Assembly (NCBI RefSeq): GCF_016432865.1 | Contig: NC_067401.1 | Span: 30,628,001-30,692,000, forward strand | Direction of reading: 5' to 3' | DNA from: Antechinus flavipes | Taxonomy: Eukaryota | Length of the DNA: 64,000 nucleotides | Part shown: positions 37,101 to 38,538 of the stretch, piece after piece | Position numbering within the stretch: position 1 is the stretch's first letter | How the letters are laid out: each line of letters begins with the position of its first letter | Made by a program: the position numbers and the translations under genes | Notes under the pieces: model-generated | The model's database searches: none | What the model was told of the DNA's origin: nothing | What the model saw: the letters and a program-made list of their open reading frames with translations, nothing else

Positions 37101-38538
37101 GTGGGTGGGTGGGGGTCTCATCACCTGGGGCAGATAGATTCCACTGCCCCCCTCCCCCGTGCCCACAGCCACATACCCTGGGGGGTCTCACTGCCCCCCT
37201 CCCCCATGCCCACAGTCACATACCCTGGGGGGTCTCACTGCCCCCCTCCCCCATGCCCACAGTCACATACCCTGGGGGGTCTCACTGCCCCCCTCCCCCA
37301 TGCCCACAGTTACATACCCTGGGGGGTCTCACTGCCCCCCTCCCCCATGCCCACAGTTACATACCCTGGGGGTTCTCACTGCCCCCTCCCCCATGCCCAC
37401 AGCCACATACCCTGGGGGGTCTCACTGCCCCCCTCCCCCATGCCCACAGTCACATACCCTGGGGGGTCTCACTGCCCCCCTCCCCCATGCCCACAGTTAC
37501 ATACCCTGGGGGTCTCACTGCCCCCCCCCCATGCCCACAGTCACATACCCTGGGGGTCTCACTGCCCCCCTCCCCCATGCCCACAGTCACATACCCTGGG
37601 GGGTCTCACCACCTCCGGCAGATAGATTTCACTGCCTTCCAGGAGCTCGTGGAGGAAGAGAGGGGGGTCTGCAGAAGCAAGGTTAGTAGAGTGACCCACA
37701 GAGGAATGGGGGGACCCTCCCAGCTCGCCCTGACATCACACCCTCTCTGAAGTGGAAATTTAAATGAAAAATGCCTGTCCCTCAGCTTTCCCAGCTCAGC
37801 CTGGGCAGCCGGAAGGTCAAACTGAACTAAATCCTGCTTAAGTGAAGAGGACTGACTTGAAGTACTTGGAAGGTGAAGCCCAGGAATTTTCGCCCGTGGT
37901 AGAAGAGACATAAAGACAAAGGGTGGGAACGTTGACGATCAAATAGCTGATAATTCACTTGTTACTTATCTTTTTTGGCCGGCCACGTTCGGATAAACGA
38001 AGGAACCGCGTGAAGGTTCACCGCGACCCTCAGGGAGGACGAGCGGACGCCAGTGGTCAATGCCGGACCCCCTCGTTTTGAGAAACTATTCTCGCCCCCG
38101 CGGCACGCGGGGGTCCCACAAGACCAGGCCGGAGGGGAGGAAGCTGACTTGGTGCAGAAATGGGGATGCGAAGGGGGCGGAACCTCAGTGTTGGTCCAGA
38201 TTCGGTCTCGGACCCTGGACCAGCTAAGACCCTTCCTCAGAATCAGAAACTAATTTTCCGAAGAAATAAGACACGTAGAGTCCCCCCAGGAATCTGCCTC
38301 CTGTGCGCGGGCGGGGGGAGCGCTCACCCTGCTCCCTGAGGTGCACGCGCAGCTCCCGGAGCAGATGGAAGGGCACCAAGGGCCTGGAGGCGTCGCCCTC
38401 GCCCCCGGCGGCCTTCTTCTCTCTTAGAATCGCCTCCAGCCGCGCCCGCAGTCCGCGGGGCAGGTGCGCCGCCTCCAGTTCCCCTCCGGGACTCAGGAGC
38501 CTTCGTAGCCGTTCCCCGGCGCGCACGGAGGACGCCAT
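34118..38538 (-). CDS. TMEM199: TMEM199 (Vma12 homolog, V-ATPase assembly factor), 6 exons, 208 aa
   Basis: Exons 38538-38328, 37668-37595, 36631-36542, 35369-35327, 35118-35006, 34213-34118; total 627 nt, all GT-AG. Motifs [60 protein letters not shown] match TMEM199. Candidate minus-strand AATAAA at 32426-32431. Confidence 0.96.
37114..37610. repeat. 47-bp minisatellite, 9 full units plus partial units, in TMEM199 intron 2, derived from the exon 2 3' end
   Basis: Unit GCCCACAGTCACATACCCTGGGGGGTCTCACTGCCCCCCTCCCCCAT starts at 37161, 37208, 37255, 37302, 37349, 37395, 37442, 37489 and 37533; the unit at 37579 runs into the real exon. Confidence 0.97.

What the first reader, a model, noticed from the sequence alone, without database searches (positions are those of the whole stretch)
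37161..37668. Exon-derived minisatellite stacks nine identical decoy 5' splice sites behind TMEM199 exon 2, each gated by an in-frame stop
Seen: in the TMEM199 sense direction each 47-bp unit ends in GTGAGACCCCCCAGG|GTATGT, a copy of the last 15 nt of exon 2 plus its donor. The true donor is at 37595; identical AGG|GTATGT 9-mers recur at 37549, 37505, 37458, 37411, 37365, 37318, 37271, 37224 and 37177. Reading past the true donor gives GTA TGT GAC TGT GGG CAT GGG GGA GGG GGG CAG TGA, so any decoy use introduces a premature stop. Known: competing donors and premature stops couple splicing to NMD, TMEM199 is a V-ATPase assembly factor, and its loss causes a glycosylation disorder in humans. Inference: copy number could act as a heritable dial on productive TMEM199 mRNA, or the locus shows how the spliceosome picks one of ten identical donors. 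I know of no description of this array, but I cannot search.
Basis: partly seen in the sequence, partly recalled or inferred. Interest (0 to 1): 0.82.

Follow-up and report, generated by a model that had tools for sequence, protein, structure and literature searches.

The report
Splice-donor minisatellite in dasyurid TMEM199 intron
A real tandem repeat that starts inside TMEM199 exon 2 copies its splice donor nine times into the intron and has persisted in dasyurid marsupials for over 20 million years, but the same architecture is already known and studied in human genes such as F7, so this is a new example, not a new kind.

Summary
On the minus strand of the window (Antechinus flavipes chromosome CM028220.1), a 47-bp minisatellite of 10.1 copies at 95% identity begins in the last 15 nt of TMEM199 exon 2. 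It places nine further AGG|GTATGT 9-mers behind the true donor at 37595. One TGA 33 nt into the intron is in frame for every decoy.

It is not an assembly artefact. Orthologous arrays sit at the same junction in Sminthopsis crassicaudata (46 bp x 9.5) and in two Sarcophilus harrisii assemblies (38/40 bp x 12.6). Dromiciops has a single unit in a 169-nt intron. The array is therefore at least as old as crown Dasyuridae (about 21-29 My), and its units evolve in concert.

The kind is known. Borensztajn et al. 2006 (PMC1557585) describe the same architecture in human F7 intron 7 and list IFI6, CBS, LMNB2 and PDGFA. In F7 the identical pseudo-sites are functional but silent, because the most upstream donor is always chosen.

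The most likely reading here is silent pseudo-donors, with the stop an incidental consequence. In the other two genera the first decoy gives only a frameshift. The copy-number dial is untested; no transcript data could be reached.

The scan's notes list two similar, unchecked arrays in this genome (RGL3, AIRE). Verdict: new member of a known kind, modest interest.

The parts
38328..38538 (-). TMEM199 exon 1 coding part (ATG at 38538; donor CAGG|GTGAGC, phase 1)
   Evidence: Read directly. tblastn of the annotated Antechinus TMEM199 protein: residues 1-70 at 100% identity.
37595..37668 (-). TMEM199 exon 2 (74 nt; ends in phase 0 with ...GTG GTG AGA CCC CCC AGG)
   Evidence: Acceptor ctgcag|A at 37669/37668 and donor AGG|GTATGT at 37595/37594. 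Residues 71-95 of the annotated protein. No G-run of 3 or more in the exon.
37589..37597 (-). Authentic 5' splice site 9-mer AGG|GTATGT (first unit of the array)
   Evidence: All gene models join ...RPPR to NPELV.... Predicted U1 duplex -7.0 kcal/mol against -14.0 for the consensus.
37142..37609 (-). Homogeneous minisatellite, modal unit 47 bp, 10.1 copies. It carries nine pseudo-donors AGG|GTATGT, with last exon-like bases at 37549, 37505, 37458, 37411, 37365, 37318, 37271, 37224 and 37177.
   Evidence: TRF, pattern search, unit list.
37559..37561 (-). First in-frame stop (TGA) when exon 2 is read past the true donor; shared by all nine pseudo-donors
   Evidence: ORF 37559..37699 ends ...[15 protein letters not shown].
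36840..37141 (-). About five older, degenerate, longer units (~70 bp) that also copy more of exon 2 (GCAGTGRAATCTATCTG...GTGAGA...); remains of the original longer duplication
   Evidence: Read directly. tblastn picks up exon-2-like pieces (residues 82-94) at 37148-37110 and 36879-36844. Orthologous distal units are seen in Sarcophilus and Sminthopsis.
36632..36839 (-). Unique 3' part of intron 2 with its acceptor (ccctag|AAT)
   Evidence: alignable by eye with Sarcophilus and Sminthopsis.
36542..36631 (-). TMEM199 exon 3

Best explanation
This is a minisatellite that straddles an exon-intron junction, of the type known from human F7 intron 7.

Origin. In the dasyurid stem lineage, a segment covering the last 40 nt or so of TMEM199 exon 2 plus the first 30 nt or so of intron 2 was tandemly duplicated. 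A shorter derivative unit, consistent with loss of the ~23 nt between two GTGA motifs (inferred by reading the sequence), was then amplified next to the exon. Unequal exchange or gene conversion has kept it homogeneous within each species since then.

Consequence. The authentic donor is followed by 9-12 sequence-identical pseudo-donors. These are most likely competent but silent. The spliceosome takes the most upstream site, as shown experimentally for F7. Here this would be reinforced by definition of the 74-nt exon and by G-run polarity: there are no G-runs upstream of the true donor, 3-4 G-runs between every pair of donors, and a G-run already present in the single-copy Dromiciops intron.

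Stop codon. Any leak through a pseudo-donor would carry a stop or a frameshift and should be removed by NMD. This is a passive by-product of intron sequence and of unit lengths that are not multiples of three, not an evolved gate.

What is shown and what is inferred. Shown: the anatomy, orthology across three genera, age, concerted evolution, and the equality of the donors by sequence, predicted U1 pairing and predicted accessibility. Inferred: silence of the pseudo-sites and the reason for it.
For: Array and identical donors.

Same junction array in other dasyurids: Sminthopsis (46 bp x 9.5) and two Sarcophilus assemblies (38/40 bp x 12.6). A single unit and a 169-nt intron in Dromiciops.

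Age: the crown-Dasyuridae split has median estimates of 20.6-28.6 Mya across six analyses (PMC5715987).

Concerted evolution: the intronic part of the unit is species-specific, while the 19-nt core GAGACCCCCCAGGGTATGT is invariant.

First donor is the one used in models: RefSeq, Ensembl-derived and third-party models in three species all join RPPR|NPELV.

Precedent: F7 pseudo-sites are functional but never compete, the most upstream site is chosen, and no secondary-structure explanation was found (PMC1557585).

Donors are equivalent here: predicted accessibility of the true donor is 0.50, against 0.42-0.68 for decoys. U1 duplex energies are -7.0 to -7.8 kcal/mol for true and decoy sites.

G-run asymmetry: 0 upstream of the true donor against 3-4 upstream of every decoy.

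The stop is not conserved as a gate: the first decoy in Sminthopsis and Sarcophilus gives only a frameshift.
Against: No transcript data could be reached, so silence of the pseudo-sites is by analogy only. Gene models may be driven by homology.

In IFI6 (12-nt unit) and CBS (31-nt unit) the first two pseudo-sites are used (PMC1557585), so some use of the first decoy here cannot be excluded.

Three features could indicate selection on the array itself: persistence for over 20 My, similar copy number in three genera (9.5-12.6), and an invariant donor core.

The G-run polarity argument rests on general literature recalled from memory (McCullough and Berget 1997; Xiao et al. 2009, cited in PMC3606033). 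Borensztajn et al. found no autonomous intronic element in F7.
Confidence: 0.68

Rival explanations
1. One reading: a share of transcripts splice from pseudo-donors, acquire a premature stop and are degraded by NMD. Copy number would then tune productive TMEM199 mRNA downwards, acting as a heritable dial.
For: All nine decoys in Antechinus are identical to the true site in the 9-mer, and nearly so in predicted U1 pairing and accessibility. Every decoy use gives a stop or frameshift upstream of four more exon junctions. Precedents exist: proximal pseudo-sites are used in IFI6 and CBS, and a CBS VNTR paper reports reduced activity.
Against: In F7, the closest analogue (37-bp unit), pseudo-sites are not used at all, even when strengthened to a consensus value of 91. 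F7 repeat number correlates positively, not negatively, with mRNA. The stop 'gate' is not conserved in the other genera. Two devil assemblies have the same unit count, so there is no sign of the length variation a dial needs. No truncated dasyurid products were found in the protein collection, though that is a weak test.
Confidence: 0.12
2. The array is kept by selection as a positive element. It would be a platform of U1-binding pseudo-sites and G-runs (hnRNP H/F sites) about 0.9 kb from the transcription start. Such a platform could strengthen recognition of a weak exon-2 donor, or support transcription and protect against premature cleavage.
For: The exon-2 donor is the weakest of the three TMEM199 donors scored by predicted U1 pairing (-7.0 against -9.0 and -11.6 kcal/mol). 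The array has persisted for at least ~21 My at 9.5-12.6 copies in three genera. The donor core is invariant while the rest of the unit changes: 0 changes in 19 columns against roughly 7-8 events in 26 columns, about P = 0.01 by my own rough count. A G-run follows the donor already in Dromiciops. F7 repeat number correlates directly with mRNA level.
Against: Core invariance is also expected without selection on the decoys, if the first unit, which is constrained as coding sequence and true donor, takes part in homogenisation. Variants that weaken or destroy decoys are tolerated: AGA|GT in 4 units of one devil assembly, GC for GT in one unit of the other, and C deletions in Antechinus. Dromiciops, which has no array, shows a conserved protein and an ordinary gene model; the array status of the other marsupials could not be read. 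Similar donor arrays are noted at two other genes of this genome (unchecked), which suggests a general mutational tendency.
Confidence: 0.15
3. The array is an assembly artefact, that is, a collapsed or expanded repeat.
For: The sequence is rich in G and C homopolymers, which is error-prone. The two devil assemblies differ in homopolymer lengths and in four G/A positions.
Against: Four assemblies of three species place an array of similar length at exactly the same junction, each with its own unit variant.
Confidence: 0.01

Closest known systems
Human F7 intron 7 37-bp VNTR (O'Hara and Grant 1988; Borensztajn et al. 2006, PMC1557585)
   Same: A minisatellite whose first unit spans the exon-intron border, with the authentic donor followed by several strictly identical pseudo-donors. 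It is G-rich with a unit of similar size (37 against 46-47 bp) and similar copy number (5-9 against 10). Secondary structure does not separate true from pseudo sites, either there or here.
   Different: F7 copies only 4 nt of exon; here 15 nt, and 40 nt or more in the older units. In F7, some pseudo-sites would keep the frame; here every decoy gives a stop or frameshift. F7 polymorphism and splicing were measured experimentally; here nothing is measured. This array is shown to be shared by three genera and to be at least ~21 My old. No comparison of the F7 array across species came up in what I read.
Human IFI6 (6-16) exon 2/intron 2 dodecanucleotide minisatellite (Turri et al. 1995, cited in PMC1557585)
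   Same: The repeat reiterates the splice donor at an exon 2/intron 2 border.
   Different: It has a 12-nt unit with 25 pseudo-sites, and the two proximal pseudo-sites are used constitutively. By my recollection they add in-frame codons. Here the spacing is 46-47 nt and any use would be out of frame or stopped.
Human CBS intron 13 31-bp VNTR (Yang et al. 2000; Lievers et al. 2001, cited in PMC1557585)
   Same: A VNTR at an exon/intron border with reiterated donors. It is a precedent for repeat number associating with lower gene output.
   Different: Two pseudo-sites are used in CBS. The association data are human and population-based; nothing equivalent exists here.
LMNB2 100-bp and PDGFA intron 4 81-bp junction repeats (cited in PMC1557585)
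   Same: [quoted passage not shown] Here about 750 of the 963 nt of the intron are repeat-derived.
   Different: Those units are longer; they are different genes in a different lineage.

Membership tests
Exon-intron junction minisatellite with reiterated 5' splice site (F7 IVS7 type) | Tandem array of units of roughly 10-100 bp | tested here: met
   47 bp x 10.1, 95% matches
Exon-intron junction minisatellite with reiterated 5' splice site (F7 IVS7 type) | The first unit spans the exon-intron boundary and contains the authentic donor | tested here: met
   The array starts at 37609, 15 nt inside exon 2. Unit 1 holds AGG|GTATGT at 37595.
Exon-intron junction minisatellite with reiterated 5' splice site (F7 IVS7 type) | The donor sequence is repeated identically in the following intron | tested here: met
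   Ten identical 9-mers against 0.34 expected
Exon-intron junction minisatellite with reiterated 5' splice site (F7 IVS7 type) | Only the most upstream donor, or the first few, is used in mRNA | not testable with these tools
   Only gene models are available, and all use the first donor. No transcript reads could be reached, and no truncated products were found.
Exon-intron junction minisatellite with reiterated 5' splice site (F7 IVS7 type) | Copy number varies within a species (VNTR) | tested here: inconclusive
   Two devil assemblies have the same number of units but differ in sequence. No second Antechinus genome is held.
Unproductive splicing coupled to NMD (regulated poison site) | Use of the alternative site creates a stop more than ~50 nt upstream of the last exon junction | tested here: met
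   TGA at 37561-37559, with exons 3-6 downstream
Unproductive splicing coupled to NMD (regulated poison site) | The alternative site is actually used, and its product rises when NMD is blocked | not testable with these tools
   No RNA data
Unproductive splicing coupled to NMD (regulated poison site) | The poison element is conserved beyond neutral expectation | tested here: inconclusive
   The donor core is invariant in three genera, but this can be explained by homogenisation with the constrained first unit. The stop itself is not conserved in position.
TMEM199 / Vma12 gene | Encodes a Vma12-family protein orthologous to TMEM199, next to POLDIP2 head-to-head | tested here: met
   Exons match the annotated Antechinus TMEM199 protein, Pfam PF11712. 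The neighbouring divergent gene carries YccV-like and DUF525 domains; I take it to be POLDIP2 from known synteny.

The most novel reading that the evidence does not exclude
The multi-donor, G-run array is not neutral. On this reading it has been held at about ten copies for over 20 million years in dasyurids because it works as a U1 and hnRNP H/F landing platform that secures a weak exon-2 donor, or promoter-proximal transcription, of an essential V-ATPase assembly gene. The three genera would then form a natural series for testing 5' splice site choice, with spacings of 38/40, 46 and 47 nt. In the devil the true donor (GTGCGT) also differs from its pseudo-donors (GTATGT).
Probability: 0.13. 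Interest if true: 0.55.

Novelty: new member of a known kind. Interest (0 to 1): 0.3.

Why it matters
If the pseudo-donors are silent, this locus adds a marsupial example, conserved for over 20 My, to the small set of junction minisatellites (F7, IFI6, CBS, LMNB2, PDGFA).

It also offers something the human cases, as described in the one paper I read (PMC1557585), were not used for: a comparison across species. Three related species differ in unit length, and in one of them the true donor has diverged from its pseudo-donors. That could test the 'most upstream site wins' rule without engineered constructs.

The locus also illustrates concerted evolution of a repeat anchored in a constrained exon. 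It does not open a new mechanism.

Tried and rejected
(1) Transcript evidence. I searched the protein collection with residues 40-130 of the Antechinus protein for truncated or variant dasyurid products from run assemblies. None were found. The full-length search showed no run-assembly members for dasyurids.

(2) More alleles or species. An exact scan of metagenome contigs for the 21-mer gave 0 hits.

(3) More marsupial introns. DNA could not be fetched for Trichosurus, Vombatus, Macrotis, Monodelphis or Petaurus because the files were too large. Only their gene spans are known: 3.2-3.5 kb, and 4.9 kb in Monodelphis, against 4.1-4.4 kb in Antechinus and Sarcophilus. The Sminthopsis X2 isoform was not on record.

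(4) RNA structure as the discriminator. Predicted accessibility does not separate the true donor from the decoys. Rejected.

(5) U1 pairing strength as the discriminator. Energies are equal within 0.8 kcal/mol. Rejected.

(6) G-quadruplex masking of decoys. Every unit, including the first, has the same long-loop G4-capable motif, and none has a canonical short-loop motif. It does not discriminate.

(7) Recursive splicing at CCCCCCAG|G. The AG lies one base off the GT, so resplicing would leave an extra G. Rejected by reading the sequence.

(8) Locus-specific literature. TMEM199 with 'tandem repeat' gave nothing on this array.

(9) McCullough and Berget 1997 could not be read, so what I say about its content is from memory.

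Full report
**What is there**

Read on the minus strand, the window carries TMEM199.
- Exon 1 runs from the ATG at 38538 to 38328.
- Exon 2 is 37668-37595, 74 nt.
- Exon 3 starts at 36631.

The exons match the annotated Antechinus flavipes TMEM199 protein of 208 aa, Pfam Vma12. The locus fetched for that protein, from GCA_016432865.2 chromosome CM028220.1, is identical to the window apart from the window's masked Ns, which I did not read. The window is therefore that genome.

TRF reports one array at 37142-37609: period 47, 10.1 copies, 95% matches. The full 21-mer (15 exon nt plus GTATGT) is exact in the true site and six decoys. It has one substitution in one decoy and lacks one C in the other two.

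Exon 2 ends on a codon boundary. Reading on gives [11 protein letters not shown] and then TGA at 37561-37559. This is one stop that lies upstream of all nine decoys, not one stop per decoy.

**Wider anatomy**

Downstream of the homogeneous array, at 37141-36840, lie about five degenerate units of roughly 70 bp. They copy more of exon 2, including the GCAGTGAAATCTATCTG part. tblastn recognises two of them as copies of residues 82-94.

So the first duplication took 40 nt or more of exon plus about 30 nt of intron. The 47-bp unit looks like a derivative in which the stretch between two GTGA motifs was lost. This is my reading of the sequence, not a tool result.

About 750 of the 963 nt of intron 2 are repeat-derived. 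Each unit also holds a second donor-like site, GCA|GTGAGA. Exon 2 itself holds GTG|GTGAGA 15 nt upstream of the true donor.

**Other species**

- Sminthopsis crassicaudata has a 46-bp unit x 9.5 at the same junction, again with one true and nine identical AGG|GTATGT sites.
- Sarcophilus harrisii has a 38/40-bp alternating unit x 12.6 in two separate assemblies.
- In the devil the true donor is AGG|GTGCGT while the pseudo-donors are AGG|GTATGT.
- One devil assembly has AGA|GTATGT in four units; the other has GC for GT in one unit.
- Dromiciops gliroides has no array. Its exon 2 ends with the same GTGAGACCCCCCAGG|GTATGT, followed by a G-run, in an intron of 169 nt.

The array therefore arose after the dasyurid lineage separated from that of Dromiciops and before the Dasyurinae-Sminthopsinae split. 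That split has median estimates of 20.6-28.6 Mya across six analyses (PMC5715987). Sequences for other marsupial orders could not be fetched.

**Concerted evolution**

Within a species, units are 91-97% alike. Between species the intronic part of the unit differs by substitutions and indels, including a 9-nt deletion in the devil. The array has therefore been homogenised separately in each lineage.

The 19-nt core GAGACCCCCCAGGGTATGT is invariant in all consensus units and in Dromiciops. By my own rough count there are 0 changes in 19 core columns against 7-8 events in the other 26, about P = 0.01. The core thus evolves more slowly.

This does not show selection on the decoys. The first unit is constrained as coding sequence and true donor, and if it takes part in homogenisation the same pattern follows.

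**Is the stop a gate?**

In Antechinus every decoy lies behind the TGA. In Sminthopsis the first decoy adds 46 nt, and in the devil 41-43 nt, with no stop inside the insertion. Those cases give only a frameshift. Unit lengths of 47, 46, 38 and 40 nt are not multiples of three.

Any decoy use would thus be unproductive in all three genera and should be an NMD target, since four exon junctions follow (the 50-55 nt rule is established knowledge). But the particular stop is not conserved and looks incidental.

**What separates the true donor from its copies?**

- Not the 9-mer, which is identical.
- Not predicted U1 pairing: -7.0 for the true site, -7.0 to -7.8 for decoys, and in the devil -7.3 for the true site against -7.8 for decoys.
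- Not predicted accessibility: 0.50 for the true site against 0.42-0.68 for decoys.
- Not G4 potential, which is the same in every unit.

The one clear sequence difference is context. The 47 nt upstream of the true donor hold no G-run of three or more, whereas every decoy has 3-4 such runs upstream. All sites have 3-4 downstream.

Intronic G-runs are known splicing elements bound by hnRNP F/H (PMC3606033). Elements placed just upstream or downstream of a 5' splice site have clear positional effects (PMC4163160). My recollection that G triplets placed between duplicated donors favour the upstream one (McCullough and Berget 1997) could not be checked.

The exon-2 donor is weak: -7.0 kcal/mol against -9.0 and -11.6 for the donors of exons 1 and 3. 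That fits a reliance on such elements.

**What is known**

Borensztajn et al. 2006 (PMC1557585) describe exactly this architecture in human F7 intron 7. It is a 37-bp VNTR whose first unit spans the exon 7 border, with five to nine units and strictly identical pseudo-sites. Using 50 constructs they showed four things:
[quoted passage not shown] - Pseudo-sites strengthened to a consensus value of 91 still do not compete.
- No secondary structure or autonomous intronic element explains the choice.

They list the same arrangement in four other genes: IFI6/6-16 (25 pseudo-sites, two proximal ones used), CBS intron 13 (two used), LMNB2 and PDGFA (none used).

Copy-number effects are also on record. 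F7 repeat number is reported to correlate directly with mRNA level (PMC3492156, citing Pinotti et al. 2000). A CBS 31-bp VNTR is associated with reduced activity (title in the reference list).

Nothing on this array in TMEM199 was found.

**Verdict**

It belongs to a known kind.

The best-supported reading is that the decoys are silent pseudo-sites because the first donor wins (confidence about 0.68). The NMD dial (about 0.12) and a positive platform role (about 0.15) remain open alternatives. No RNA evidence could be reached, so use or silence of the decoys is inferred from analogy and gene models.

The scan's own notes list two similar donor arrays elsewhere in this genome, at RGL3 and AIRE. 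These are unchecked. If real, they point to a general tendency rather than a feature special to TMEM199.

Noticed in passing
window 39152-39401: A 92-bp tandem repeat, 2.7 copies at 97% identity, upstream of the TMEM199 start inside the divergent neighbour (probably POLDIP2). Dromiciops has a 98-bp x 2.5 repeat at a comparable place (L003 1186-1425). Whether the two are homologous was not checked.
   Followed up: no
L002 3758-4246 versus L005 2237-2730: The two Sarcophilus assemblies have the same number of units but differ in the array. Four units read AGA|GT in one assembly only, one unit reads GC for GT in the other only, several homopolymer lengths differ, and the first repeat junction reads CAGGAGACC against CAGTGAGACC. 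These are either real alleles or homopolymer assembly errors.
   Followed up: partly
window 37609-37604 and each unit (e.g. 37563): There is a second donor-like motif. GTG|GTGAGA lies inside exon 2, 15 nt upstream of the true donor; using it would remove five codons in frame. GCA|GTGAGA occurs in every unit. Neither is used in any gene model.
   Followed up: partly
L002 (protein P0004) and proteins P0003, P0132: Some devil TMEM199 models are longer: 240 aa from a misplaced exon 1/2 boundary, 279 aa from an upstream start, and a 219-aa model whose N-terminus does not match exon 1. None involves the intron 2 array.
   Followed up: partly
window 17227-17584: An AT-rich 183-bp repeat, 1.9 copies at 82% identity. 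Not examined.
   Followed up: no
window about 32800-33000: A masked run of N, seen as X in ORF translations.
   Followed up: no
same genome, other windows (scan notes s1-211348, s1-200974): First-stage notes report similar donor-derived minisatellites behind RGL3 exon 2 and AIRE exon 8 in this genome. Unchecked.
   Followed up: no
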